A stretch of DNA of 63,597 nt, the filler included, from Octopus bimaculoides (lineage: Eukaryota): NCBI RefSeq assembly GCF_001194135.2. It is 6 parts of 5 records of this genome, joined end to end, with 100 filler letters (N's around TTAATTAATTAA, not from the genome) between each part and the next. Parts side by side here need not be neighbours in the genome. Positions count along the whole stretch, not along the records: positions 7,394 to 25,732 come from NC_068994.1; 5 more parts are not named here. The stretch is one strand, 5' to 3'. The notes under the pieces were generated by a model, which saw only the letters and a program-made list of their open reading frames with translations, was not told the DNA's origin and searched no databases. Below, piece after piece: positions 11,641-27,489 of this stretch (position 1 is its first letter; each line of letters starts with the position of its first letter). Both the position numbers and the translations under genes were made by a program.

Positions 11641-13268
11641 GCATGTGGCAGATGCTCAGTAGCAATAAATGCTGAAAATGTGCAGAGAACAACTTCTGCC
11701 ACATTCCAGGGAGAAAAACTACAAGTAGTTGACATCTTCCGTTACCTAGGTCAGGGGTTTTCAAACTTTTTGACTTGCGGACCCCTTTATATTTCAGGCT
11801 TAGGGACCCCCTTATAAACGCTTATGAAATTTATACATAAATATTTACTTAAAATAACATATATTTTTACATTTATTTATTTAACAGTATTTAACAAATA
11901 GGTTTATTGTCAATTAAAAGATTTCGATTAAAAACATATATAAAATCAAATTGCCCATAAAAAGTATTTGCTGTCCACGGACCCCCTGTCTTGTCCTTGC
12001 GGACCCCCTGTGGTCCGCGGACCACAGTTTGAAAACCCCTGACCTAGGTGACCAAGTCAGTAGCTCTGAAAGTGTAGCTGCTAGAATAAGAATAGCCTGG
12101 GCAAAGTTCTGAGAGCTCCTACCTCTGCCGGTGACAAAGGGCCTCTTGCTCAGAGTAAACAGTAGACTAGTATGACGCATGTGTACGAACAGCCATGCTA
12201 CATGGCAGTGAAATATGGGCCGTGACTGCTGAGGACATGCGTAAGCTTGCAAGGAATGAAGCCAGGATGCTCCGCTGGATGTGTAGTGTCAATGTGCATA
12301 CATGACAGAGTGTAAGTGCCTTGAGAGAAAAGTTGGACCTAAGAAGCATCAGATGTGGTGTGCAAGAGAGACGACTGCGCTGGTATGGTCATGTGGTTAG
12401 AATGGATGAGGATAGTTGTGTGAAAAAGTGTCCCACCCTAGCGGTTGAGGGAACCTGTGGAAGAGGTAGACCCAGGAAGACCTGGGATGAGGTAGTGAAG
12501 CATGACCTTTGAACATTGCCTCATCGAGGCAATGACTAGTGACTGAGACCTTTGGAAATATGCTGTGCTTGAGAAAACCTGGCAAGCCAAGTGAGACCAT
12601 AACCTGTGGCCTATGCCAGTGGTGTANNNNNNNNNNGTGCTTGAGAAAACCTGGCAAGCCAAGTGAGACCATAACCTGTGGCCTATGCCAGTGGTGTAAC
12701 CAGCCCACTTATGCGTACCTTTCTTTCATTGGACACTAAACTCTGTTTGCGAAGACTTGTTGAGGCAAGTGAAATCAAAATTAAATTCGCTGACATGGCT
12801 GATGACAGCACCGCATGGCTGGCATCTGTGCTAGTGGAACGCTAAGAGCACCATCCGAGCGTGATTGTTGCCAGGGCCGCTGACTGGCTCCCATGCTGGC
12901 GGCACGTAAAAAGCACCATTCAAGCATGATCATTACCACTGTTGCCTAACTGGCATGTGAAAAACAATATTCAAGCGAGGCTGTTACCAGTGCCACTAGA
13001 CTGGTTCCTGTGCAGGTGGCACAAAAAAACCCCACCATTTTGAGCATGGCCGTTGCCAGTACTGCCTGACTGGCCCTCATGCTGGTGGCACGTAAAAGCA
13101 TCCACTACACTCTTGGACTGGTTGGTGTTAGGAAGAGCATCCAGCTGTAGAAACTTTGCCAGATCAGATTGGAGCCTTGTGCAGCCATCTGACTCGCCAG
13201 TCCTCAGTCAAACCGTCCAAACCATGCCAGCATGGAAAGCAGATGTTAAACGATGATGATGATGATGA
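11640..13268 (+). mobile_element. 5'-truncated RTE (BovB-like) LINE relic with 3' UTR, ~60-bp subrepeats and (GAT)n tail
   Basis: VVDIFRYLG|DQV..VAARIRIAWAKF rejoins across the MITE, then LREKL..QERRLRWYGHVVRM..VEG..GRGRPRKTW. The 3' UTR has repeated GGCACGTAAAA(A)GCA units and ends GTTAAACGATGATGATG. Confidence 0.88.
11752..12041. mobile_element. hAT (Buster/Charlie-like) MITE, 290 bp, with 8-bp TSD
   Basis: TIRs CAGGGGTTTTTCAAACT and AGTTTGAAAACCCCTG. TSD ACCTAGGT at 11744-11751 and 12042-12049. Subterminal palindrome CTGTGGTCCGCGGACCACAG. Confidence 0.93.
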
Positions 13269-13462
13269 TGTATATATATATATATATGTATACATATATA
13301 GATAAATATTTATATATATTTATGTATATGTATATATATATATGTACATATATATTTATATGTGTGTATATATGTATGTATGTATATATGTATATATATA
13401 TATATGTGTGTGTGTGTGTATGTGTGTATGTATATATTATATATGTATGCATATATATAATG

Positions 13463-13630
13463 TGACTGCGACCATGCTGGAACACTACCTTTTGTCAAAG
13501 GAATTGACCCCAGGATTTATTCTTTGCAAGCCTAGTACTTATTCTCTCGCAGTGTTTTGCCAAACAGCAAAGTTACGGGGACGTAAACACAGCAACATCA
13601 GTTGTGAAGCAATGGTGGCGGTACAAACAG
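13463..13630 (-). mobile_element. Family A SINE 3' half; further family A pieces on + at 13690-13835 and 13925-13990
   Basis: GACTGCGACCATGCTGGAACAC..GACCCCAGGA.TTATTCTTTG.AAGCCTAGTACTTATTCT is the reverse complement of the family A tail. Confidence 0.75.
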
Positions 13631-13890
13631 ACATACACACACACATATATATACTTGTATACATATATGTGTGTGTGAGAGTGTTTTTGTAACCCCACCA
13701 TTGCTTGATGACAAATGTTGCTGTTTTTATGTCCCTGTAACTTAGCCGTTTGGCTAAACTTGCTAATAGAATATGTACTACGCTGGCAAAGAATAAATCC
13801 TGGCGTTGATTTATAACCGAAACAAGTAAAACAATAAAAAACTACACAATTTTAATCCTAAATAACGCCTGGTATCTCTGATATATTCAT

Positions 13891-13921
<31 letters not shown>

Positions 13922-14034
13922 CTTAACAACCACATGGTTCCGGGTTCATTCCCACAGCGTGGCACCTTGGGCAAGTGTCTTCTACTATAGAAAAAATATA
14001 TGTATGAGGAGTGTTAATTAAAGATTAATTTAAT

Positions 14035-14120
14035 GTCAGTCAGAAAAGATATGCAGTTATAAACACCTGGAAAATACTGGAAAGACTTCTACCAAACTTT
14101 GGTATTGAAAACTATTCAAT
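14035..14120 (+). mobile_element. Short LINE (CR1/L2-like) ORF2 C-terminal fragment
   Basis: QKRYAVINTWKILERLLPNFGI resembles the ERYxIIYxWKILExLVPN motif. Confidence 0.5.
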
Positions 14121-14338
14121 AGCAACATTTTCCTTTTATGCACCTAATTCAATGAAATTAGGTTACTCTGATTACTATGCATAAAAGACAAAATAATTTT
14201 ATTTATTCGTAGATTAGGTAGGCATAATTTGCTCCTGGTTTTCAATCTCAGTATTTAAGCTACACACAGTACTACTGTGGTACACGTGTTTCATACACTT
14301 CTACAGTACCCTTTTCTTTACGTGCTATAAAAAGAGAG

Positions 14339-14575
14339 TGGAGGCTCAATGGCCCAGTGGTCAGGGCAGCGGACTCGCGGTCATAGGATCACGGTTTCGA
14401 TTCCCAGGCCGGGCGTTGTGAGTGTTTATCGAGCGAAAACACCTAAAGCCCCACGAGGCTCCGGCGGGGGATGGTGGCGAACCCTGCTGTACTCTTTCAC
14501 CACAACTTTCTCTCACTCTTACTTCCTGTTTCTGTTGTGCCTGTAATTCAAAGGGTCAGCCTTGTCACACTGTCA
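14339..14575 (+). mobile_element. Family C SINE, truncated by N-gap, upstream of paralog 1
   Basis: High similarity to 5314-5702. It shares diagnostic variants (GCTCAATGG, GTGGTCAGGG, GCCCCACGAGG) with the copy at 17860. Confidence 0.92.
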
Positions 14576-15025
14576 NNNNNNNNNNNNNNNNNNNNNNNNN
14601 NNNNNNNNNNNNNNNNNNNNNNNNNNNNNNNNNNNNNNNNNNNNNNNNNNNNNNNNNNNNNNNNNNNNNNNNNNNNNNNNNNNNNNNNNNNNNNNNNNNN
14701 NNNNNNNNNNNNNNNNNNNNNNNNNNNNNNNNNNNNNNNNNNNNNNNNNNNNNNNNNNNNNNNNNNNNNNNNNNNNNNNNNNNNNNNNNNNNNNNNNNNN
14801 NNNNNNNNNNNNNNNNNNNNNNNNNNNNNNNNNNNNNNNNNNNNNNNNNNNNNNNNNNNNNNNNNNNNNNNNNNNNNNNNNNNNNNNNNNNNNNNNNNNN
14901 NNNNNNNNNNNNNNNNNNNNNNNNNNNNNNNNNNNNNNNNNNNNNNNNNNNNNNNNNNNNNNNNNNNNNNNNNNNNNNNNNNNNNNNNNNNNNNNNNNNN
15001 NNNNNNNNNNNNNNNNNNNNNNNTT

Positions 15026-16138
15026 GATGAAAGCAGGAAGTTAATGGAGATGGTGAGTTATTACGGCGATCAATTGCAAACTTTTTTGGACATTTTAAAT
15101 GAAACAGGCAACAAAAAGCTAGCAAAATGTATAAGTGAGAAAAAAAACGAATTTGTTTTCATGATCAAAAGTAAACAATACCTGAATCCCGAAGGAAGAC
15201 AGAATCATTGCTCGTTGTTACCTCGCAGTATACCAACGCAGTTTATTTACGAATCTAATGTTGAAGATGTCATAGATAAAGTAAAAGAGAAATATAAATG
15301 CCGCAAGCCCATAGCCGATAGATTGTATGTAGTCATCGTCTGTAAAGAAACGAACGGAGATTCTATCTTTTATACTGATGACGACAACATTTTAATTCGC
15401 AAGTTCATTGAAGATATTTATGACATCTTCGATAAAAATGAAGAAATAAAAATAATTGCCATCGTTGATGCCAATGACGAAGAGAAAGACAGAGTAAAGA
15501 CTGAGAAAGACTATTTATTTACATGTTCAATAGCAGAAAGTACAGAAATGTATATCATTGAAAAAAAAAGGAATGAGGACCTGAAAGACTTCAAGTATTG
15601 TGAGAATGTGATGGATTTGTTAAAAAAGATTCCCGATGAGAAAATGAATCTCTACTACAATTATATCTATATTATCATGATGCAGAACAGCGATAGAAAA
15701 ATACAAAAAGCATTGAATAATAAAATAAAACGTATTAAAATAGAATCTAAAAAAATGAACAAACTACAAAAAGTAGAAAATTTTGTTCAGGAAATAAAGC
15801 CTTATTTGAAGCCTGAAATGAAAAAATTCATAATATTCTTCGTAGAAAACTACTGGAAGGTTGAAGTGGCCCTTGATTATATCAAAAAATTATTTACAAA
15901 CCTCTCTGATTTGAAGAAAGAAATTGATATAGTGATACGAAAAACTGATAAACTTACAATTCCAAAAAATATTTCAGTAAAAAAGTCCGACTGGGATAAG
16001 ACAAAATATGTGAGCTTCTATGTGATGGACGAAGAGAAGTGGGTAACAATTTTGGAATCCTCAACGGAAAAACAGATCTCTGTAGATGGCTTTCTAAGAG
16101 AATACTGTTCTAAGATCGAATATGTGGAAGAAAAATAA
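15026..16138 (+). CDS. Intronless ORF (370 visible codons, 5' end in gap): CARD-like death fold plus putative catalytically inactive caspase-like region
   Basis: 1.1 kb stop-free in AT-rich DNA, with a homologous paralog at 18755-19902. ESRKLMEMVSYYGDQLQTFLDILNETGNKKLAKCI fits CARD helices 4-6. Downstream strand/helix motifs resemble the caspase fold by eye only. Confidence 0.75.
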   Translation, partial: DESRKLMEMVSYYGDQLQTFLDILNETGNKKLAKCISEKKNEFVFMIKSKQYLNPEGRQNHCSLLPRSIPTQFIYESNVEDVIDKVKEKYKCRKPIADRLYVVIVCKETNGDSIFYTDDDNILIRKFIEDIYDIFDKNEEIKIIAIVDANDEEKDRVKTEKDYLFTCSIAESTEMYIIEKKRNEDLKDFKYCENVMDLLKKIPDEKMNLYYNYIYIIMMQNSDRKIQKALNNKIKRIKIESKKMNKLQKVENFVQEIKPYLKPEMKKFIIFFVENYWKVEVALDYIKKLFTNLSDLKKEIDIVIRKTDKLTIPKNISVKKSDWDKTKYVSFYVMDEEKWVTILESSTEKQISVDGFLREYCSKIEYVEEK

Positions 16139-17530
16139 GGACTTGTAGGAATTTCATGATTTATATATCTCGAATAAGCAAAATACAGTGATTAGCTTGC
16201 TCCCCACTTCAAGTGTGTCTGAAGCATATTTGGACTGATAATAACATTCCAATCATATATCTTCATTCCAGCTTGAATCATAAAAGTACAGATGTTCTTA
16301 TCACTGTGGAATAACTCCCTGCTTCCAAGGCCTGTTTTTCCATAATGATCTTAAAAATTTATGTTTTTAATGAAATGTAGTTATACATTTTAGAGATGGT
16401 GTTTATTATGATAATATTGGAGACAGGAGAATTGAATATGAAATTGTTTGAAGGAACATTCCACTCTTCACTGACATTGTTAAAATTATGTTTTTGAATG
16501 AAATTTTCTAGAGATATGTTTTTGAGGTCCTAGATTATGATTATCTTGATTAAAGTTAGGAAAAACAAAAATACAAGTTTCAAGTGGTTCCATATCATTG
16601 CCAAAAATAAAGAGGCACTCATAAGTTCCTGTATTGTGTGAAACCTGTGGTCATTTTCCACTTTAATTTGCTCAAGAGAATTCTTTGAAAGAAATATTTT
16701 CGAACAAGTTTGAGTAGAATGCTAACACTTCATTTATTGAATACATATTTCTTTCATTCAAAGGGTTGAAGGAAAATTGAACATGTTTTTCAAGTTTTAT
16801 CATGAAAATCATACTCTATACGCTTAAAAATGTATCTCTGAAAAACTTTAGTAAAAAAAAGTAAGCATTTTAAAGAAAGTTATGAGGAAAGAAAATACTG
16901 ACGATGGGGTAAAATTTTGTAGTTACACCAAAAACGTTTTGTTATATTAAAGATTTTTATTTCATTCCATAGTTAAAGTTTTGGAGAGCATAACATTTGA
17001 AAGAGTGACATGATATTAAAGCATACAGTTATATAGTTTACTTCAGTTAAAGGGAATTATTTGGTATTTTTCAGTGGAGATTATTATAAAGTGCCTTTAA
17101 TTTTGGTGGAAAACCATTTCATTTTATTCACACTGTTGATGTGCTTGTTTTATGCATAAGCATTAAGCCTCCATATACTGCTGAAATTTCCGAGATGCTT
17201 TGCTTAATGAAAAGAAACTAAGAGCAAAAATTAATCAGACTTCAAAGTCTTGCTTTTTAAAGTTGTTTTTGTTTCTTTTCTTTGTTTCTTTTCTGTTTTC
17301 TCTTAGTTCTACAGATTTTAATGATTGAAAAAGATTTTCAAATACTAAATTCAATAAAGTATTAAACTGCTCTTTGATATGCCAGCTGTTCATGTCCTTT
17401 TTTTGTATGCCACGTCTATGGGCAAGTAAATTTATCTTCATTAAGGTCTTTGATAAATTACCTTGAGAAATATATTTGGGATTATTGCGTTGTAAGTTCA
17501 GTTTTCACTGAGGTCAAATTTGCCTATCGC
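16139..17530. repeat. 3' flank of paralog 1, duplicated at 19903-20445 and 21020-22185
   Basis: Shared blocks such as TAAGGACTTGTAGGAATTTCATGATTTATAT, GAAATTGTTTGAAGGAACATTCC (three copies, ~16440, ~20225, ~21028) and TTTTCACTGAGGTCAA. Confidence 0.85.
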
Positions 17531-17859
17531 TGCAAAGAACGGTGACAATGGTATTAGACGTAAACACGTGGACCATCATATCACTTGTTTGGCATTGTGC
17601 TTATTCACAACCATCGGAGGGCGACACGCTCCTCACGGACGCAAGTTCTGCGTCGGATCCAGAGTTATGAACATAAAATGCACATGTACACACTGAATTC
17701 ATAAAACCGAAGAGAGGGATAAAAACAAGTTGTTATCTTCAAGTTTAGGGAGGTAAAAAGTAAATAAAAATATACAAGGGAAATAACTCAACATCTTACT
17801 AGTATTATCCGTACTAATCTGAAATGTTTTCTTTTTTAGCTGTTTATAAATAAATCACA

Positions 17860-18249
17860 GTGGATGCTCAATGGCCCAGTGGTCAGGGCAGCGGACTCGC
17901 GGTCATAGGATCGCGGTTTCGATTCCCAGATCGGGCGTTGTGAGTGTTTATTGAGCGAAAACACCTAAAGCCCCACGAGGCTCCGGCGGGGGATGGTGGC
18001 GAACCCTGCTGTACTCTTCCACCACAACTTTCTCTCACTCTTACTTCCTGTTTCTGTTGTGCCTGTAATTCAAAGAGTCAGCCTTGTCACATTGTGTCAC
18101 GCTGAATATCCTCGAGAACTACGTTAAGGGTACACGTGTCTGTGGAGTGCTCAGCCACTTGCACGTTAATTTCACGAGCAGGCTGTTCCGTTGATCAGAT
18201 CAACTGGAACCCTCGACGTCGTAAGCGACAGAGTGCTAACAACAACAAT
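17860..18249 (+). mobile_element. Family C SINE, full length, upstream of paralog 2
   Basis: Complete head to (AAC)n tail, with the same diagnostic variants as the 14339 copy. Confidence 0.92.
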
Positions 18250-18754
18250 NNNNNNNNNNNNNNNNNNNNNNNNNNNNNNNNNNNNNNNNNNNNNNNNNNN
18301 NNNNNNNNNNNNNNNNNNNNNNNNNNNNNNNNNNNNNNNNNNNNNNNNNNNNNNNNNNNNNNNNNNNNNNNNNNNNNNNNNNNNNNNNNNNNNNNNNNNN
18401 NNNNNNNNNNNNNNNNNNNNNNNNNNNNNNNNNNNNNNNNNNNNNNNNNNNNNNNNNNNNNNNNNNNNNNNNNNNNNNNNNNNNNNNNNNNNNNNNNNNN
18501 NNNNNNNNNNNNNNNNNNNNNNNNNNNNNNNNNNNNNNNNNNNNNNNNNNNNNNNNNNNNNNNNNNNNNNNNNNNNNNNNNNNNNNNNNNNNNNNNNNNN
18601 NNNNNNNNNNNNNNNNNNNNNNNNNNNNNNNNNNNNNNNNNNNNNNNNNNNNNNNNNNNNNNNNNNNNNNNNNNNNNNNNNNNNNNNNNNNNNNNNNNNN
18701 NNNNNNNNNNNNNNNNNNNNNNNNNNNNNNNNNNNNNNNNNNNNNNNNNNNNNA

Positions 18755-19902
18755 TCTGAATGTTTAAAAGACATCGACCGAGTTATTGATTTGGCACGCA
18801 AGAAGGAAATTTTGAATGAACACGAAAAAAATTATGTGAATGAAAGCAGGAAGTTAATAGAGATGGTGAGTTATTACGGCGATCAATTGCAAACTTTTTT
18901 GGACATTTTAAATGAAACAGGCAACAAAAAGCTAGCAAAATGTATAAGTGAGAAAAAAAACGAATTTGTTTTCATGATCAAAAGTAAACAATACCTGAAT
19001 CCCGAAGGAAGACAGAATCATTGCTCGTTGTTACCTCGCAGTATACCAACGCAGTTTATTTACGAATCTAATGTTGAAGATGTCATAGATAAAGTAAAAG
19101 AGAAATATAAATGCCGCAAACCCATAGCCGATAGATTGTATGTAGTTATTGCCTGTAAAGATCTTTCCGAAATATTTACTAAGGGTTATGAGGAAGATGA
19201 AATGAGCCGTTTACTCATACATATGTATAATATATTCGGTGAAAGTAAAGAAATAAAAGTAATTGTCAACCTTGCTTCAATCACCGGAAAGGAAAATTGC
19301 TATTTTTTGCCATCCTCAATGATGGGAAACATAGAGATGTATATCATTAAAAGTAAAAAGGATGAGGAACTGAAAGACTTGAAAGTTTGTACGAGTGTTG
19401 CAGATACGTTAAAAAAAAGATTACAGTAGCAAAATAACTTTCACCGAGAGTTATACGTATCTTCTTGCGACGAATTCCAATAAGAGTGATAGAAACTAAG
19501 TTGTGTTCTGTTAACATGGTCAGTTTAAGACGACGTTCATTAAGTGATTGTGCAAAAATCGCTCAAGAAAATATAAATAAGAAACAAGACAAAATCAGGG
19601 GCGTTGAACTAAGGTCCAAGATCAAACGAATCATAATAATTTTTGTAGAAGCATTCTGTGACAGTGAAGAGGTTACTAATTTGTTTGAAACGTGCTACAA
19701 ATTGGAGAAAAGAATTGATATAGTAATTAAAAACGGCGAAGAAGGATATAAACTGAAAGACTCTGAGTGGAAGAAGAAACATAATGTGTTCATTTATGAC
19801 CAGGACAAAATTGTGAAGATAAAATCCTTGAAAGAAAAGATCTCTGTAGATAATTTTCTTAGAGAATACTGTACCAAGATCGGTGATGAGAATGAACAAT
19901 AA
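18755..19902 (+). pseudogene. Paralog of the CARD-like ORF, disrupted by frameshifts (or sequencing errors) around 19400-19500
   Basis: Frame 18755-19429 aligns to paralog 1 and stops just after an A8 run (A6 in paralog 1). The C-terminal homology (IIIFVEAF..IDIVIK..ISVDNFLREYCTKI) resumes in another frame and ends at a stop homologous to that of paralog 1. Confidence 0.72.
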
Positions 19903-20446
19903 GGACTTGTAGGAATTTCATGATTTATATGTCTTCAACAAGCGAGATATATTCTCGGTGACAAAACGCAGTGATTAACTTTTTCCCCAGTTTGAGCATA
20001 TTCGGATTTATAATAACATTGCAATTATATACCTTCAGTCAATTCTGAATCAGAAAAGTACAGATGTTTATAAGACTTTACAATAACTACAGTCGTTTTT
20101 TACTCTCTTCTCGTTAGGCCTGTTTGTCGATAACGTTCTTAAAAGCTTGTTTTTAATGAAATGGAGTGATACATTTTAGATGGTGTATATTACGATAATA
20201 TTGGAAGCAGAATATTTGAAAACGAAATTGTTTGAAGGAACATTCCGTTCTTCACTGACTTTGTAAAATACATAAAATTTTTCTAGAGATATGTCTTTGA
20301 AGCACTAGATTATGATTATCTTGATAAAAGTTGGAATCCCCGCACAGAAAAAAGCAAGTTTCAATAATTCCATGTCATTGCTAGAAATAGAGGCACGCAT
20401 AGGTTCCTAGTTTGTGTGAATCCTGTTGTCAACTTTGCTTATCATT

Positions 20447-21010
20447 TTTCTAGGGCTCGAGAAATAAAAATGGTGGATTGGTAGAATCCCCAGAGAGTTT
20501 GACGAGATGACATACAATGTTTATTCCATCTTTTTGTATTCCGATTTTAAATCGTGCAATGGCTTTTATAGGTTGAAGACTCGATCCTATTTAACAACAC
20601 TACCCTGGGTGCTTTAGTGGAGCCCACACAATTGCAAGCAAGCAAGCAATCAAGCAAGCAAGCAATCAAGCAAGCAATCAATCAAGCAAGCAAGCAAGCA
20701 AGCAAGCATTGAGACCATATATCTGGTTTGAGGATACGTTCTACAAACTGTTTTGCAGGACCCAGTATGAGGTTGTCTCCAAAAGTTTTGTGTATTGTAC
20801 GGGAGATAATTGCGTGCAATTTAATGAGATTTATCTCCCCGTGATAGTATTGGAATTATTTTTGCCTGACCTCACATTCACTGCTTCAGTTTTGAAGGCA
20901 ATTCTGTAGGGAGAATGAGAGGAAGGCTACATGGTCTCATTAACATTCATGGCTGTGTTGTTAAGAAGTATGCTTTGCAACCACTTTGTTTTTGAATACA
21001 TCCCAGTGTG
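20447..21010. repeat. ~0.5-kb duplicated block, second copy at 22184-22700
   Basis: Both begin TTTTTC(T/C)AGGGCTCGAGAAATAAAAATGG and end TTTGAATACATCCCAGTGTG. They differ by an (AAGC/AATC)n expansion and a 15-bp indel. Confidence 0.88.
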
Positions 21011-22974
21011 TATAGTGTCATGAAAATGAAATTGTTTGAAGGAACATTCCGCTCTTCACTGACATTGTTAAATACATACGTTTTAATGAAAATTTCTAGA
21101 GATACGTCTTTGAGGCCCTAGATTATGAATATAGAGATTAAAGTGGACCCCCTACGAAAAAACAAAACAAAAAACAATAACATAAATTTCGAGTAATTCC
21201 ATGTCATTGCCAGAAATAAAGAGGTACTCATAAGTTCCTGTTGTCGCTTTTCTCTTTAATTTGCTCAAGAAAATTCTTCGAAACAATATTTTTGAAAATG
21301 CGGAGTAGAATGCTAACACTCCATGTATTGAGTACATGTCTCTTTCATTCAAAATGTTGATAGATAGAAATATAAATAAAAAAATTGGACAGCGGATAAT
21401 GGAAGGATTTTTAAACGCTTCTCACCGGAAAAATCAATATTTTTTTTCAAGTTTTATCACACTAATCATATTCTATACACTTAAAATCGAATCTCTGAAG
21501 AACTTCAATAAAAAACAGTAAGCATTTTAAAGAAAGTTACAAGGACAGAAATTGCAGACGATGGGACACAATTTTGTAGTCATACCAAAAATGTTTTCTT
21601 TTATTAAAGATTTTCGTATTATTCCATAATCAAAGTTATTGAAAGCGTAAGATTTGAAGTTGTAACATGATATTAAAGCTTGTATTTAAATATTTTACTT
21701 CAGCTAAAAGGGATAATTTGGCATTTTTTAATAGAGACTATAATAAAGTGCCTTCAATTTCGGTAGCAAACTGTTTCATTTTATTCATACTGCTGATGTG
21801 CTTGTTTTATGCTCTAACATTAAACTTACATGTACTCATGAAATTTCCGAGATGCTTTGCTTAATGAAATTAAACCTCAAACGTCTTATTTTTTTTAAAA
21901 ACTTGCTTGTCTTCGTGTCTTTCTTTGTTTTTTTTTTTCTCTCTCTCTTTGTTCTACAGATTTTAATCATTGTAAAGGTTTTTGAAATGCGGAGTTAAAT
22001 AAAATATTGAACTACTAATTGAAGTGCCAGCTGTTCATATACTTTTTCATTGTACGGCACCTTTTCTATGGGCATGTAAATTTATCCTCATTAGGGTTTT
22101 GGACGATATACTTTGAGTAATATATTTTGGTTCATTACGTTGTGTGTTCAATTTTCACTGAGGTCAACTTCGCTTATCATTTTTCCAGGGCTCGAGAAAT
22201 AAAAATGGAGGATTGGTAGAATCTCCAGAGAGTTTGACGAGATGACATACAATGTCTATTCCGTCTTTTTGTGCTCCGATTTCAAATCGTGCAATGGCTT
22301 TTATAGGTAGAAGACTTAATCCTATTTAACAACACCGTCTTTGGTGCTTTAGTGGAGCCCATACAATTGCAAGCAAGCAAGCATTCCGACCATATGTCTG
22401 GTTTGAGGATAAATTTTTGTAACAGTTTTAAAGGGCCCAGTATGGGGCTGTCTTCAAAGAGTAGCACCGAAATAGTATTGTGTAATGCACGGGAGATAAT
22501 TGCGTACAATTTAATGAGATTTATCTCCCCGTGATAGTATTGGAAATATTTTTGCCTGACGTCACAATGAACGCTTTAGTTTTGAAGACAATACTGTAGG
22601 GAGAATGAGAGGACGGCTACATGGTCTCATTAACATTCATGGGTGTGTTGTTAAGAAGTATGCTTTGCAACCACTTTGTTTTTGAATACATCCCAGTGTG
22701 CAGCATTGTGTATAAATGTTTTCTATTATAGTGTCCGGATCTTTTTTAAAACGGGGGCCACATTTTTCATTAACGAAACACTTTGAAACTTGGAACACTG
22801 GTAGAATGTGTCATATAAAACATCTTTTTCTCTTAGTCTTCTTAAAAAAAAAAGAAATCCATAAGTTATTCCATGTGAAAGTTGTCGTATTTCTGTAATT
22901 TCAACCAATCACTGACGTCCATTCAGTCGATATACATTAAGTGCCGACTACATAAACAAACGATTCTGAAACAA

Positions 22975-23014
22975 TTAACCCTAACCCTAACCCTAACGTT
23001 AGGGTTAGGGTTAA
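22975..23014. repeat. Interstitial telomere-like (CCCTAA)n-(TTAGGG)n palindrome; further (TTAGGG)6 at ~23470-23508
   Basis: Perfect 32-bp palindrome at 22982-23013 centred on AACGTT. Confidence 0.9.
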
Positions 23015-23699
23015 AGCAANNNNNNNNNNNNNNNNNNNNNNNNNNNNNNNNNNNNNNNNNNNNNNNNNNNNNNNNNNNNNNNNNNNNNNNNNNNNNNNNN
23101 NNNNNNNNNNNNNNNNNNNNNNNNNNNNNNNNNNNNNNNNNNNNNNNNNNNNNNNNNNNNNNNNNNNNNNNNNNNNNNNNNNNNNNNNNNNNNNNNNNNN
23201 NNNNNNNNNNNNNNNNNNNNNNNNNNNNNNNNNNNNNNNNNNNNNNNNNNNNNNNNNNNNNNNNNNNNNNNNNNNNNNNNNNNNNNNNNNNNNNNNNNNN
23301 NNNNNNNNNNNNNNNNNNNNNNNNNNNNNNNNNNNNNNNNNNNNNNNNNNNNNNNNNNNNNNNNNNNNNNNNNNNNNNNNNNNNNGTGTGTGCGTGCGTG
23401 TGCGTGCGTGTGCGCGCGAGTGTGTTTGTGCGTGTGTGCACGCGAGGTGTACTTGCGGTTTGCTAGAGGTTTAGGGTTAGGGTTAGGGTTAGGGTTAGGG
23501 TTAGGGTTACGCTCCTCAAAAAAATGAAGAGGTTTCTATTTTCATTCATATCCCCTTAAGGCAGATAATATGCGAAAAAAAAAAAAAGCCCTGTTGTCAT
23601 TGTTGCTATATGGGCGACTTAGAAATTTCTAGCTTTCTAAATATTCATCTCCTTTCTAACTTTTGCGGGTGACCAGTGATTTTCAGCGACGGGAAGTCT

Positions 23700-23975
23700 T
23701 TTGCATTGACCCTAGTGCTCAAACGGTACTTATTTTATTGTCCCGGAACAGATGAAAGCAAAGCCAAGCTCGGCAGAATCTAAATATTGGTACCAAATTT
23801 TGGCACAAGGCCAGCACTTTCGGGGAAGGGTGTAAATTGATTACATCGAGCTCAGGACTCAACTTGGTCCTTGTTTTATTGACGCTGAAACGATGAAAAG
23901 CAAAGTCGATCTTGGCAGAATTTGAACGCAGAACGTAAAGACGTCCGAAATGCTGTTAAACATTTTTTGCCAGCT
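23700..23975 (-). mobile_element. Family B SINE, two partial diverged copies
   Basis: GGCACAAGGCCAGCA..GATTACATCG..AAAGCAAAGTCGATCTTGGCAGAATTTGAAC.CAGAACGTAAAGACG. Confidence 0.72.
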
Positions 23976-24932
23976 CGGCGTCTTGAATTTGATTAAATAT
24001 CGCTAGGCGTTTTGTTCTGAATGTTCGGAAGCCTGTGATGGAAATGTTTCAACTGTATTAATGAGAGAAAATCTTTGTAAAAGTTCGGACACGATAAAGG
24101 CACTACATTTTAACCAATGGCTTCCAAATATAACCAGTGATGATCTCGGACAAACAATAATGACTATTGCCGAAGAACTTCAGGTGCTGCAATGGACTAT
24201 TAGACCTGCAGTGCACGAGGACATGCTTGCCCCACGTTCCATATTCGCATGAGCTTGCACCTTTTGAGTCCCTCCTGTTTCAGCCACGTTAAAAGTTAGT
24301 AAACGGACTGAACTTCAAATCTGAAAACGATGTAAAAATTTATTTACAAACGTTTTTTGCCAGTAAAGACAGGAAATTCTTTAAGCAGGGAATGATGAAT
24401 CTGTCCCCACATGATAGAAGGTACTGGAACGAAACTGTAATTACATATTTGATTGAATAAATTGTTTTGTGTTTAAAACCCGTGTCTTATTTTCGCTGAA
24501 AAAAAGCTTCAACATACTTTGTGGCAAACCTAATATGTACACACACACACACACACGCACGCACACACAAACGCACACACACACACACACACACNNNNNN
24601 NNNNNNNNNNNNNNNNNNNNNNNNNNNNNNNNNNNNNNNNNNNNNNNNNNNNNNNNNNNNNNNNNNNNNNNNNNNNNNNNNNNNNNNNNNNNNNNNNNNN
24701 NNNNNNNNNNNNNNNNNNNNNNNNNNNNNNNNNNNNNNNNNNNNNNNNNNNNNNNNNNNNNNNNNNNNNNNNNNNNNNNNNNNNNNNNNNNNNNNNNNNN
24801 NNNNNNNNNNNNNNNNNNNNNNNNNNNNNNNNNNNNNNNNNNNNNNNNNNNNNNNNNNNNNNNNNNNNNNNNNNNNNNNNNNNNNNNNNNNNNNNNNNNN
24901 NNNNNNNNNNNNNNNNNNNNNNNNNNNNNNNN

Positions 24933-24964
<32 letters not shown>

Positions 24965-25557
24965 TTCATTCACACACACACGCACACACACGCGCACGCA
25001 CAAGATTTAATGATATTTGCGAAAAACCTTGAAGTATGCTACTCAAAGTTCGTCGACAGTCATTAGCTACCAAATGTCATCATACTTTTGTCACTGGATA
25101 TAAATTTGGAAATCTATATTATCCATAGAGTTTATGTAAAGGTACAAGGAAGTGAAAATGGATTGAACGACATTATTTATTTCATATTAATACAATTGTT
25201 TCCATTAATTGTCACATCTATAGCACATCGGTGAGATGGTATAATTATTATCTTACGTAATTACTATTACCTATCAAAGGTGTATAGTGTGTTTCTTCAG
25301 ATGAGCATTTTGAATAAGTCCTGAGTAAGACCAGGCTGTCATTGCATTCTGTACAAGAATGAAAACTCAAGAAAACTACCCCAATAGCGAACAGTAGAAA
25401 AAAGAGATGTTTCTATTTATATTACTTCGATTACACATATTATTAGTTAACTGTGGATAGCTATGTATAATTATATAAAACTATCTAAATCTAAGCAAGC
25501 AGACTCTCGTGTTTCAATGTTGTTGTAGACTTCCGTTGTTGGCAGATTTAAAACTCA

Positions 25558-25702
25558 ACGTAGTTGCTGAAAAGTTCCTGGCTTTAAGAGTATTGCGAAA
25601 GGCCTGGCTTGATGCCCAAACTTCCGGGTTCTTTGACAGGGCTTAGAAAAACTGAAGGACCACTGCAATAAGTGTGTGAATCTGAGATGGTAATATGTTG
25701 AA
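25558..25702 (+). mobile_element. Short mariner-derived non-autonomous fragment
   Basis: TIR-like ACGTAGTTGCTGAAAAGTTCCTGGCTTT, followed by HCNKCVNLR..YVE resembling the mariner transposase C-terminus (W.KCV..G.YVE). Confidence 0.5.
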
Positions 25703-27489
25703 CTTTTCAGCGCCCCTCGTACACACACACACNNNNNNNNNNNNNNNNNNNNNNNNNNNNNNNNNNNNNNNNNNNNTTAATTAATTAANNNNNNNNNNNN
25801 NNNNNNNNNNNNNNNNNNNNNNNNNNNNNNNNTATATATATATATAACATACATCCATACGCCTGTGTGTGTGCGCGGGCCCATTTATGTGTACGTTGAG
25901 GACGAGATTGGTGGGAAGCTGGAATTAAAGTATTAGTGTAATAATGAAGAACCAATAGAATTGACAGAATTGAAGTTAGAAATGTGTGTGTGTTCAGTGC
26001 GTAATCAAAGGTGGATAACTTGTTTCTCTGTGTAGGTTGTGAAATATAGACGTATTTGAAAGAAATCTTGTAATGGCTTACGCAAAAGAATAGATGGCAT
26101 TTATATATGACATTATTTTCTTCCCGAAATTTCCAAGTTAACATTCCTTCTGAAAAGATAAATATTTAATAAAATTTTACTATTGTGTTTTTCGTTCAGC
26201 TAATGGTTTAAGGTTTGATATACATACATGCATACATACATACATTCATACATACAAACAAACATACATACATACATACATAGATACAAACATACATACA
26301 TACATACATACATACATCCATACTCACTCACACATATACATACATACATGTGTGTGTGTAAATGCTGATATTCTTGTGGGAGATGTGAACATCCAATGTT
26401 TTATAAGTATTCGCATTTCTTTTCGGATGTATACTTCTATATATCTTTTTAAACATCGTTCCATTATTTTAATACTTTCGATTACAGTGTTAGACATCTG
26501 CGCATGATTACAGCTGAGTACTGGGAGATATTTCATTATCTTTGCAGATGGCGGCTGAATATATTTTTTCTTCCATCGCTAATTTCGTTGAAAGTTTCAG
26601 AAGTGAGCTGTTTTTAATATCCTATATTTGATGCATGGTTAAAACAAACATGACATAGTAAAATCTTCATTAAAGTTGTTCAAAAGGTGACAAGAACAAT
26701 TATACATCTTCCTGCATGGGTGAAAGTATTCCATGTATCACTACTGTATGTTAGAAACACCAAATATAGCCAAAAACATAAGCACCGCTGTGTAGGTTAA
26801 TCACGACCGCAATAGATTCCGTGATCCACCACATAATTTACCAGCCGTCATTACTTGACCAATAAAAGAACACAATCACTCATCAAATATTACCCGACAG
26901 AATTCATTCGTTTCTGTTAAATAAGGTTAAGATGGCTATATTTGTAGAAACTATGACCTCTGATTTATGGAATCTGTTATTCATTTTTCTGTTAACTTCT
27001 GTTAACACCTCAGCGATGTTAAGTCCACTAAATTTTCCAGTATACCGATATATAAAATTTGAATTTGATTAGTGACGAAGAATTTGATTTGTGAAAAAAG
27101 ACTGACAGAGAATAACGGATAAATTAACGTTAAGTAAGAAAAACAGGTTTTATCGGTAATGTGAACGACTGGAAACTTACCAATGATGATCTTACTTGCC
27201 TGTCATTGCTGAGTGCTTAAATATATGTTATCATGTAGATGTGTAACCTAGCCATTAATTGTCGCACCCATACACAGTCAATCTCTATCTCTTTCTCTAT
27301 CTCTCTCTCCCTCACACACACACACGCACGCACATAGTTTAAAGATCCACGCATCAAAGAAATTCTACTGTATCCATTGAGAGATGGATATCAATTTAAT
27401 ACATGCTCTTATGATACTTCAATAGCCATATTTATAAAATATGCCATGTATCCTAAAGCAATGTTTCAGGCTCCGTTTATAAGTTATAT

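What the first reader, a model, noticed from the sequence alone, without database searches (positions are those of the whole stretch)
15026..16138. Intronless CARD plus putative pseudo-caspase gene (possibly with tandem caspase-like units)
Seen: a 370-codon stop-free frame in AT-rich DNA with a homologous paralog. Combined with paralog 2, the N-terminus reads LKDIDRVIDLARKKEILNEHEK..ESRKLIEMVSYYGDQLQTFLDILNETGNKKLAKCI. Knowledge: this fits the CARD pattern (ILDxL...ILTxEE...ARxLLDxL..G....FLxxLxE...LA). Inference by eye: downstream motifs fall in caspase-3 order. FVFMIKSKQY corresponds to LCIIINNKNF, RLYVVIVCKE to SFVCVLLSHG (His lost), EIKIIAIVDAND (15443-15478) to KPKLFIIQACRG (Cys lost), KDYLFTCSIAES to ADFLYAYSTAPG, and terminal VDGFLREYC to GSWFIQSLC. 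The C-terminal half (KFIIFFV..YIKKLF..EIDIVIR) could be a second degenerate unit. This would be a cFLIP-like decoy or adaptor of the cephalopod death/immune pathway, but CARD-led and intronless, hence possibly a retrogene.
Basis: partly seen in the sequence, partly recalled or inferred. Interest (0 to 1): 0.82.

Follow-up and report, generated by a model that had tools for sequence, protein, structure and literature searches.

The report
Fast-evolving octopus CARD gene pair
This is a real, octopus-only pair of single-exon genes that carry a CARD (a docking domain of cell-death and immune signalling) fused to a very fast-evolving region of unknown fold; the proposed "dead caspase" identity of that region has only a weak structural hint behind it.

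Summary
The 370-codon open frame at 15026-16138 is real and far beyond chance. A paralogue lies at 18755-19902. Gaps cut both 5' ends. Copy 2 also carries two frame-breaking indels.

Only three other proteins in the public collections searched are related. Two are tandem single-exon Octopus vulgaris genes of 410 and 401 aa. One is a 259-aa Argonauta hians gene.

CARD is supported. Both O. vulgaris orthologues pass Pfam's CARD threshold, and AlphaFold models residues 10-85 as helices with pLDDT 80-86.

A caspase domain is not shown. There is no Pfam Peptidase_C14 hit. Profile-profile probability against caspases is 0.1-0.3%. No His/Cys dyad is conserved. Two low-confidence models (mean pLDDT 56) do retrieve caspases in Foldseek, but never at E <= 0.001, with TM 0.3-0.4, and in the domain-only search mixed with generic alpha/beta folds. 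The "second caspase unit" has no support.

New here:
- The 5' module (CARD plus about 67 aa) is kept nearly identical between paralogues by gene conversion, with the same boundary codon in both species.
- The rest diverges at about twice the rate of flanking non-coding DNA, yet stays open.

Best reading: an octopod-specific CARD adaptor, decoy or sensor under diversifying selection.

The parts
15026..16138 (+). Copy 1: 370 codons plus TAA. Orthologue of O. vulgaris P0002 (64% aa identity). The 5' end, about 45 codons plus the start, is hidden in the gap.
14577..15023 (.). Assembly gap (N) that removes the start codon and the first about 45 codons (CARD helices 1-3) of copy 1.
15026..15136 (+). 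C-terminal part of the CARD of copy 1 (aligns to P0002 residues 46-82). Under purifying selection (omega 0.26).
15137..15700 (+). Middle alpha/beta region of about 185 aa. The first about 67 aa are conserved (EFVFxI, LPRxIxTQFIYE). The rest is fast-evolving. Fold unresolved, with a weak caspase-like hint and no catalytic dyad.
15701..16135 (+). C-terminal region of about 145 aa. Present in Octopus, absent from the Argonauta gene. No detectable relative. Ends in the conserved ISVDxFLxEYCxKI.
15027..15333 (+). Gene-conversion tract in copy 1. It differs from copy 2 (18840-19146) at 2 of 307 nt. The boundary at 15334-15349 falls at the same codon as in O. vulgaris.
18755..19429 (+). Copy 2, 5' part: CARD from residue 10, with a 24-nt in-frame deletion at 18839, plus the middle region. 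Orthologue of P0003. It ends at a premature TAG after a 1-nt insertion in the A8 run 19411-19418.
19419..19478 (+). Copy 2, short segment that matches P0003 residues 238-259 only in a second frame. A 2-nt deletion at about 19474 shifts the frame again.
19477..19902 (+). Copy 2, 3' part in the third frame: 141 codons to TAA (the full stop-free ORF is 145 codons, from 19465), still open. It differs from P0003 only by in-frame indels (12, 3, 12, 3, 9 nt).
18251..18753 (.). Assembly gap that removes the start and first 9 codons of copy 2.
16139..17353 (+). 3' flank of copy 1, colinear with O. vulgaris. Substitution distance 0.09, with indels that are not multiples of three. Used as the neutral yardstick.
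20982..22178 (+). Third copy of the 3' flank, with no gene. Similar to 16394-17528 and orthologous to L001 14434-16445.
14330..14573 (+). SINE-like repeat upstream of copy 1. It is 95% identical to 17852-18095 upstream of copy 2.

Best explanation
The locus holds two tandem paralogues of a small gene family found only in octopods, with an intronless coding sequence. Each protein begins with a CARD. An alpha/beta region of about 175-190 aa follows, and in Octopus a further region of about 145 aa. Neither region has a recognisable relative.

Shown:
- The genes are maintained as open reading frames across species.
- The CARD plus the first about 67 residues after it are under purifying selection.
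- That module is kept almost identical between the two paralogues within each species by gene conversion.
- The remainder differs strongly between paralogues. Between species it diverges at about twice the rate of flanking non-coding DNA at all three codon positions.

Inferred:
- The CARD docks the protein by homotypic CARD-CARD contact onto a CARD-bearing signalling partner. In molluscs the candidates are CARD-caspases (caspase-2 and caspase-Y), CRADD, BCL10/CARD-CC or RLR/MAVS-type proteins.
- The variable part is a recognition or decoy surface in an evolutionary conflict.
- The pair therefore acts as adaptor, decoy or sensor proteins that tune caspase or innate-immune activation.

It cannot be an active caspase, because no His/Cys pair is conserved. 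Whether the middle region is a degenerate caspase fold is open (my estimate is about one in three).

Copy 1 looks intact apart from the gap. Copy 2 is either recently disabled by two frameshifts or misassembled.
For: Real gene:
- The chance of 370 open codons is 1.5e-15.
- Substitution-only drift of the observed amount would create about 14 stops, and 0 of 20000 simulations stayed open.
- Indels in the copy 1 coding sequence against the orthologue are 12 and 3 nt. In the flank they are 19, 2, 2, 1, 17 and 2 nt.

Family size:
- Exhaustive phmmer over 1.84 billion representatives finds only P0003 and P0004.
- The word-index searches add only P0002 and the window's own protein.

CARD:
- Pfam is above the gathering score in P0002 and P0003.
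- pLDDT is 80-86 for helices within residues 16-83.
- Weak PDB hits go to MDA5 CARD2, CARD8 and CED-3.

Selection:
- Omega is 0.26 for the CARD tail, 0.64 for aa 38-105, 1.00 for aa 106-225 and 0.93 for aa 226-370.
- Codon-position distances for aa 106-370 are 0.27, 0.20 and 0.23. Non-coding distance is 0.105 pooled over 2621 sites and 0.09 in the 3' flank.

Gene conversion:
- Paralogue dS is 0-0.08 in the 5' module. Orthologue dS there is 0.14-0.31.
- Paralogue dS is 0.58-1.1 downstream.
- The boundary is abrupt and at the same codon in both species.

Not a transposon:
- Flanks are syntenic with O. vulgaris.
- There are two copies per genome.
- No transposon or viral match was found.
Against: - No expression data could be obtained.
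- The O. vulgaris and Argonauta models carry only 'hypothetical protein' names.
- The CARD is not detected by Pfam in the window's own truncated copies or in Argonauta P0004. It rests on the O. vulgaris orthologues, which are only 1.4-3 bits above threshold.
- dS (0.28-0.30) is raised together with dN in the fast region. Exchange with unsampled paralogues or a local mutation effect could therefore mimic part of the 'positive selection' signal.
- NG86 omega is about 1, not clearly above 1.
- The function is inferred only from domain logic and evolutionary pattern.
- Gene order is the reverse of O. vulgaris, which raises doubts about the local assembly.
Confidence: 0.6

Rival explanations
1. The middle region is a catalytically dead caspase domain derived from a mollusc CARD-caspase. 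The protein would be a CARD-led pseudo-caspase that acts like cFLIP, either heterodimerising with and regulating an initiator caspase or serving as bait for pathogen proteases.
For: - A CARD is followed directly by an alpha/beta domain. This is the architecture of CARD-caspases, which are diversified in molluscs, and the Octopus caspase-Y1/Y2 are notably divergent (PMC10959488).
- Foldseek of the full-length model lists caspase-1, -3, -6, -7, -8, -9 and Sf-caspase-1 with probabilities 0.84-0.99.
- The domain-only model again lists Sf-caspase-1, drICE, CED-3 and caspase-3, -6, -8.
- The predicted element order is strand, strand, helix, strand, helix, strand, long variable acidic loop, strand, helix, helix, strand hairpin. 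By my own knowledge of the caspase fold, this resembles beta1-beta4, L2 linker, beta5, alpha4, alpha5, beta6.
- The Argonauta protein ends right after the last strand, as caspases do.
Against: - No PF00656 hit at E <= 10 in any member.
- hhalign probability is 0.2% against a caspase-3 profile and 0.1% against a profile of seven human caspases plus three caspase-3 orthologues.
- Both models are poor: mean pLDDT 56, and 40-75 in this region.
- No Foldseek hit reaches E <= 0.001. TM is 0.24-0.36 per caspase, with rmsd 6-10 A.
- In the domain-only search, cobalamin-binding and SDR/FabI folds rank as high or higher.
- The region is about 175 aa against about 240 for a caspase, and lacks one helix.
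- No His or Cys is conserved at the predicted strand ends. The only invariant Cys (C233 of P0002) lies in a predicted helix.
- The two models share one 5-sequence alignment, so they are not independent.
Confidence: 0.3
2. The frames are decaying or non-functional DNA: a young pseudogene pair or an annotation artefact. The high divergence would simply reflect loss of constraint.
For: - Overall omega is 0.77-0.84, and about 1 over two thirds of the protein.
- Copy 2 has two frame-breaking indels and a premature stop.
- There is no expression evidence.
- Only 'hypothetical' annotations exist.
Against: - Three of four Octopus copies and the Argonauta copy are open.
- Neutral drift of this size predicts about 14 stops, and 0 of 20000 simulations stayed open.
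- All indels in the copy 1 coding sequence, and 7 of 9 in copy 2, are multiples of three. Flank indels are not.
- In the 5' module, second codon positions are conserved (0.029 against 0.114 and 0.152).
- The divergence of the variable part exceeds the non-coding rate. Loss of constraint alone cannot produce that.
Confidence: 0.05
3. The excess divergence of the 3' two thirds is not adaptive. It would come from repeated patchy gene conversion or unequal crossing-over with additional divergent paralogues that are unsampled or lost. In that case window copy 1 and P0002 are not strict orthologues in that segment.
For: - Synonymous distance is raised together with non-synonymous distance (dS 0.28-0.30 against non-coding 0.09-0.105).
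- The locus demonstrably undergoes gene conversion.
- Gene order differs between the species, and a third gene-less flank unit exists.
Against: - Copy 1 is still far closer to P0002 than to P0003 throughout: 64% against 48% aa identity.
- No further paralogue exists in the O. vulgaris 21-kb locus or among the public proteins searched.
- The elevated stretch is bounded exactly by the coding sequence.
Confidence: 0.15

Closest known systems
CARD-only and CARD-adaptor regulators of caspase activation (vertebrate CARD16/COP, CARD17/INCA, CARD18/ICEBERG; CRADD/RAIDD)
   Same: An N-terminal CARD is the only recognisable signalling domain. The proteins are small, arose by local tandem duplication and are lineage-restricted. 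The presumed mode of action is homotypic CARD contact. These properties of the comparators are stated from established knowledge and were not tested here.
   Different: Here the CARD is followed by about 320 aa of structured, fast-evolving sequence with no relative. There is no death domain as in CRADD. The family is not visibly derived from a neighbouring caspase gene, and none lies in the 21-kb O. vulgaris locus.
cFLIP-L (tandem DEDs plus a pseudo-caspase domain)
   Same: Both have a death-fold domain in front of an alpha/beta region that lacks a catalytic Cys/His. A decoy or regulator role is plausible for both.
   Different: By established knowledge, cFLIP's pseudo-caspase domain is readily recognised by sequence as Peptidase_C14. 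This region is not. This protein has a CARD rather than DEDs, the region is about 65 aa shorter, and the fold is unproven.
Mollusc CARD-caspases (caspase-2, caspase-Y; PMC10959488, PMC11463336)
   Same: Both have a CARD at the N-terminus followed directly by an alpha/beta domain. Both show lineage-specific diversification in molluscs. They are possible interaction partners or a possible evolutionary source.
   Different: Those proteins carry a detectable p20/p10 domain with the His/Cys dyad and were found by BLAST and InterPro. This family has neither.
RIG-I-like receptor / MDA5 second CARD
   Same: This is the best of the weak PDB sequence matches for the CARD profile, including the FLDxLxxTGNxxLA stretch.
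   Different: E-values are 0.05-0.5, so the match is not significant. This family has no helicase domain and a single CARD.

Membership tests
CARD (Pfam PF00619, death-fold superfamily) | Match to the family HMM at or above the curated gathering score | tested here: met
   P0002 scores 27.0 bits and P0003 25.3 bits against a cut-off of 23.9, over residues 8-82. It is not met by the window's own truncated copies or by Argonauta P0004. Those align to the same residues at 37-79% identity.
CARD (Pfam PF00619, death-fold superfamily) | Compact six-helix bundle of about 85-90 residues | tested here: inconclusive
   AlphaFold models five helices (16-25, 31-38, 45-55, 59-71, 75-83) with block pLDDT 68-86. 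The first helix is not modelled. The Greek-key topology could not be checked, because Foldseek output was dominated by the larger domains.
CARD (Pfam PF00619, death-fold superfamily) | Homotypic CARD-CARD binding or filament formation | not testable with these tools
   This needs pull-down or filament assays with octopus CARD proteins.
Caspase / Peptidase_C14 (Pfam PF00656) | Sequence match to the family profile | tested here: not met
   No PF00656 hit at E <= 10 in any member, nor at E <= 0.1 for P0004. hhalign probability is 0.2% and 0.1% against two caspase profiles. BLASTP against caspase-3 gives E 0.12. A PDB profile search finds no caspase at E <= 10.
Caspase / Peptidase_C14 (Pfam PF00656) | Catalytic His (SHG) and Cys (QACxG) at the ends of strands beta3 and beta4 | tested here: not met
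   The predicted strand ends read VIVCK(E/K/N), IACKD or LAQNQ for one strand, and IVDAN, VNVNS, VNLAS or LFVGI for the other. There is no invariant His. The only invariant Cys is C233 of P0002, in a predicted helix.
Caspase / Peptidase_C14 (Pfam PF00656) | Caspase/hemoglobinase fold: six-stranded sheet in order 2-1-3-4-5-6 with the last strand antiparallel | tested here: inconclusive
   Caspases recur among Foldseek hits. For the full model, E is 0.004-0.04, probability 0.84-0.99 and TM per target 0.29-0.36. For the domain model, E is 0.06-0.3, probability 0.35-0.75 and TM 0.23-0.34, mixed with Rossmann/flavodoxin-like folds. The models have mean pLDDT 56.
Pseudo-caspase of the cFLIP type | Recognisable caspase-like domain lacking catalytic residues, preceded by a death-fold domain | tested here: inconclusive
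   The death-fold domain is present and the catalytic residues are absent, but the caspase-like domain is not recognisable by sequence and only hinted at by structure.
   hhalign of the C-terminal region gives probability 0.4% against the middle region and 0.3% against each caspase profile. The PDB profile search finds nothing relevant. The Argonauta gene lacks this half altogether.
Retrogene | Intronless coding sequence | tested here: met
   The ORFs are continuous: 1233 and 1206 nt in O. vulgaris, 780 nt in Argonauta, and 1113 nt visible here.
Retrogene | Intron-bearing parent gene elsewhere, poly(A) remnant and target-site duplications | not tested
   No tool here searches cephalopod genomes. 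No obvious A-tract was seen when reading 16139-17900. In O. vulgaris, paralogue homology starts 48 nt upstream of the ATG, which is compatible with several origins.
Transposon-encoded protein | Transposase, integrase or RT domain, many dispersed copies, no synteny | tested here: not met
   No such Pfam hit was found. There are two copies per genome. The flanks are colinear with O. vulgaris. Foldseek against viral proteins gives only generic matches with TM below 0.25.

The most novel reading that the evidence does not exclude
An octopod-born family of CARD-led, catalytically dead caspase-fold proteins. A conserved signalling module (CARD plus the first strands) is homogenised by gene conversion. 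A hypervariable module, including the loop that corresponds to the caspase inter-subunit linker, evolves under an arms race. The proteins would act as baits or decoys for pathogen proteases, or as regulators of the mollusc-specific caspase-Y. This would be an invertebrate analogue of cFLIP or of the NLRP1/CARD8 'tripwire' logic, invented independently.
Probability: 0.2. Interest if true: 0.7.

Novelty: new variant of a known kind. Interest (0 to 1): 0.45.

Why it matters
Molluscs lack APAF-1, and recent surveys report CRADD as their only CARD-containing caspase activator (PMC11463336, PMC10959488). How their expanded CARD-caspases are controlled is therefore open.

This unannotated CARD family is confined to octopods. 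Its signalling module evolves in concert between paralogues, while the remainder changes faster than neutral DNA. That makes it a concrete candidate for a lineage-specific regulator or sensor in cephalopod cell death or innate immunity.

It is also a clean small example of modular evolution within one exon: purifying selection plus gene conversion on one side of a fixed codon, and accelerated divergence on the other.

If the middle region proves to be a caspase fold, it would be a pseudo-enzyme that sequence methods cannot see.

Tried and rejected
- Pfam on the window ORFs alone gave no CARD and no caspase. The CARD appears only in the full-length orthologues.
- PADLOC and NCBIfam scans gave only noise.
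- A scan of bacterial and archaeal genomes for relatives found none. This was an uninformative use of that scan, since the collection holds no eukaryotes.
- PDB sequence-profile searches were run with the full-length, middle, C-terminal and CARD alignments. Only weak CARD hits came up.
- hhalign was run against a caspase-3 profile and against a broader profile. Three caspase-3 orthologues were added. Probability was 0.1-0.3%.
- The internal-repeat test of the C-terminal region against the middle region was negative.
- A second AlphaFold job on the middle domain alone did not improve confidence. Its Foldseek result was less caspase-specific than that of the full model.
- Foldseek against viral proteins returned only generic alpha/beta matches.
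Expression and the copy 2 frameshifts therefore could not be checked.
- A look-up of the window's own annotated protein P0001 found no record.
- tRNA and Rfam scans of the piece found nothing.
- A TIR-like fold was considered and rejected. No TIR structure appears in the 50 listed hits of either Foldseek PDB search.
- Reading RLYVVIVCK as the QACRG strand, as the best BLASTP segment does, was considered. It was rejected because too few elements precede it and the Cys is absent in Argonauta.
Full report
**1. What is in the sequence**

The piece (7394-25732) is AT-rich animal DNA. It holds several N gaps, TG/TA and CA microsatellites and SINE-like repeats.

The frame named in the finding is real. 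From 15026 to the TAA at 16136-16138 there are 370 sense codons on the + strand. The frame opens directly at the gap 14577-15023, so its 5' end is missing rather than absent.

With the ORF's own composition a stop is expected every 11 codons. The chance of 370 open codons is about 1.5e-15. The longest open, N-free frame elsewhere in the piece is 128 codons.

A paralogue lies 3.8 kb downstream, at 18755-19429 and 19465-19902, again just after a gap (18251-18753).

**2. Relatives**

Three searches were run:
- a word-index search of 5.8 billion proteins;
- a profile repeat of that search;
- an exhaustive phmmer pass over 1.84 billion cluster representatives.

Besides the window's own annotated protein, they found only three relatives:
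- P0002, 410 aa, from Octopus vulgaris;
- P0003, 401 aa, from Octopus vulgaris;
- P0004, 259 aa, from Argonauta hians.

All three carry only 'hypothetical' names.

In O. vulgaris the two genes are tandem and 870 bp apart. Each is a continuous ORF. The Argonauta gene is also a continuous ORF. It ends after the middle region, with nothing resembling the C-terminal half downstream.

Copy 1 is the orthologue of P0002: 64% aa identity, and 84.7% nt identity over 2367 nt including the 3' flank. Copy 2 is the orthologue of P0003.

The downstream flank of the window is colinear with the O. vulgaris locus. This is a syntenic cellular locus, not a mobile element.

**3. CARD**

The window's truncated copies give no Pfam hit. 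Both full-length O. vulgaris orthologues pass the curated CARD threshold: 27.0 and 25.3 bits against 23.9, over residues 8-82.

AlphaFold models residues 16-83 as five helices, and this is the only well-modelled part of the protein (10-residue block means 68-86).

A CARD-only profile finds weak PDB hits to MDA5 CARD2, CARD8 and CED-3, with E 0.05-1. They lie among unrelated weak hits, including a designed helical repeat protein that ranks first.

I accept the CARD. Copy 1 keeps only its last 37 residues (15026-15136). Copy 2 keeps residues 10-85, with a 24-nt in-frame deletion.

**4. Caspase?**

Every sequence test is negative:
- There is no Peptidase_C14 hit at E <= 10.
- hhalign of the middle region gives probability 0.2% against a caspase-3 profile.
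- It gives 0.1% against a broader profile of seven human caspases plus three caspase-3 orthologues.
- No His is invariant in the family. The one invariant Cys sits in a predicted helix.

An active caspase is therefore excluded.

The structural evidence is a hint only. Both AlphaFold models were built on a 5-sequence alignment and have mean pLDDT 56. No Foldseek hit against the PDB reaches E <= 0.001.

In the full-length search, caspases take 18 of the 50 listed hits. Their probabilities are 0.84-0.99, but E is 0.004-0.04, TM per caspase is 0.29-0.36 and rmsd is 6-10 A.

In the domain-only search they take 11 of the 50, with probability 0.35-0.75. They are interleaved with cobalamin-binding, SDR and FabI folds.

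The predicted order of elements runs as follows: strand, strand, helix, strand, helix, strand, a roughly 20-residue indel-rich acidic loop, strand, two helices, then a final hairpin. By my own knowledge of the fold, this resembles a caspase lacking helix 1. The Argonauta protein stops right after the last strand.

The region is about 65 residues shorter than a caspase domain, and the two models are not independent. I put the pseudo-caspase reading at about 0.3.

The 'second unit' has no support.

**5. How the genes evolve**

This is the most informative result. Against O. vulgaris, copy 1 has omega values as follows:

| Region of copy 1 | omega |
|---|---|
| CARD tail | 0.26 |
| aa 38-105 | 0.64 |
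| aa 106-225 | 1.00 |
| aa 226-370 | 0.93 |

A sliding window of substitution distance gives:

| Window coordinates | Distance per site |
|---|---|
| 15025-15324 | 0.09-0.11 |
| 15475-16074 | 0.22-0.29 |
| 3' flank | 0.06-0.11, with 0.15 in the last, partial window |

Seven other non-coding segments, plus the first 90 nt of the copy 2 flank, pool to 0.105.

In aa 106-370 the three codon positions differ by 0.27, 0.20 and 0.23. In aa 1-105 they differ by 0.114, 0.029 and 0.152.

So two thirds of the protein change about twice as fast as nearby non-coding DNA, at replacement positions too. Yet the frame stays open. Substitution-only drift of this size would add about 14 stops, and 0 of 20000 simulations stayed open.

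Coding indels in copy 1 are 12 and 3 nt. Flank indels are 19, 2, 2, 1, 17 and 2 nt.

This is the pattern of a functional gene under diversifying selection. One caveat applies: dS is raised as well (0.28-0.30). Exchange with unsampled paralogues could therefore contribute.

**6. Concerted evolution**

Within the window the two copies differ at 2 of 307 nt (15027-15333). From 15349 onward they differ at about half of all positions.

In O. vulgaris the pair differs at 17 of 506 nt, from 48 nt upstream of the ATG to position 10458. The similarity then breaks at the same codon, 153 of P0002.

Paralogue dS in this module (0-0.08) is below orthologue dS (0.14-0.31). Downstream, paralogue dS is 0.58-1.1.

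The CARD and the first about 67 residues after it have therefore been homogenised independently in each species. The variable parts are old and orthologous across species.

**7. State of the two copies**

Copy 1 appears intact, apart from the gap that hides about 45 codons.

Relative to P0003, copy 2 carries a 1-nt insertion in an A8 run (19411-19418) and a 2-nt deletion near 19474. These do not compensate each other. They give a TAG at 19427-19429.

The downstream 145 codons are still open. They differ from P0003 only by in-frame indels. The breaks are therefore either recent or assembly errors. I could not check them with reads.

The truncated product would end 8 residues before the natural end of the Argonauta protein.

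**8. Mechanism**

Shown: a CARD, coding constraint, modular selection and gene conversion.

Inferred from the established role of CARDs as homotypic oligomerisation domains: the conserved module docks onto a CARD-bearing partner, and the hypervariable module is a recognition or decoy surface. In molluscs the candidate partners are caspase-2, caspase-Y and CRADD (PMC10959488, PMC11463336). BCL10/CARD-CC (bioRxiv 10.1101/046789) and RLR/MAVS-type proteins are also possible.

The pair would thus act as adaptors, decoys or sensors in cell death or innate immunity. The two paralogues would offer two specificities on one signalling module.

**9. Comparison and novelty**

The locus works most like CARD-only or CARD-adaptor regulators, or like cFLIP. 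It is a member only of the CARD family.

The roughly 320-residue remainder has no detectable relative in the public collections searched. I rate it a new variant of a known kind. It is of moderate interest (0.45), pending expression data and a confident fold.

Noticed in passing
window 15026-16138 and 18755-19902, against L001 7926-9131 and 10001-11233: Gene order is reversed relative to O. vulgaris. There the P0003-type gene lies upstream of the P0002-type gene. Here the P0002-type copy comes first. Both window copies start right after N gaps, so either a rearrangement by unequal crossing-over or a scaffolding error is possible.
   Followed up: partly
window 20982-22178 (also 20178-20367): This is a third copy of the 3' flank unit, with no gene. 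It is similar to 16394-17528 and orthologous to L001 14434-16445. tblastn finds no coding remnant there. It suggests an ancestral array of at least three units.
   Followed up: partly
window 14330-14573 and 17852-18095: A SINE-like repeat lies upstream of both copies. The two are 95% identical to each other and 86-87% identical to a copy at L001 19785-19995. Neither ARAGORN nor Rfam recognises it. The high identity suggests that the homogenised tract may extend upstream of the genes in this species.
   Followed up: partly
window 8581-8833, 11064-11260, 13022-13270: This is another dispersed repeat family, in direct and inverted orientation at 85-94% identity. It ends in a (GAT)n run and also occurs at L001 12475-12662.
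   Followed up: no
window 9252-9548 (-): A 98-codon ORF reads by eye like the C-terminal part of a mariner-type transposase (DNARPH ... PSDYYLF). This is a recollection only, because the Pfam scan gave no hit at E <= 0.1.
   Followed up: partly
window 18839: Copy 2 lacks 8 codons (KSFxHGSY in O. vulgaris) inside the CARD, between the second and third modelled helices. Whether copy 1 shares this deletion is hidden by the gap.
   Followed up: no
L001 9953-10000 and 7878-7925: In O. vulgaris the similarity between the two paralogues begins abruptly 48 nt upstream of the ATG (GAGTGCGAGGCGACTTCG...). This could mark the transcription start, a splice acceptor of a 5' UTR intron, or the edge of the conversion tract.
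   Followed up: no
L002 10001-10780: The Argonauta hians gene encodes only the CARD plus the middle region (259 aa). It carries extra insertions, of 8 and 13 residues, in the middle region. The C-terminal roughly 145-aa region of Octopus is therefore a separable module.
   Followed up: partly
window 10497-10726, 13222-13471, 24519-25011: These are long TG/TA and CA microsatellite tracts that border several of the assembly gaps.
   Followed up: no
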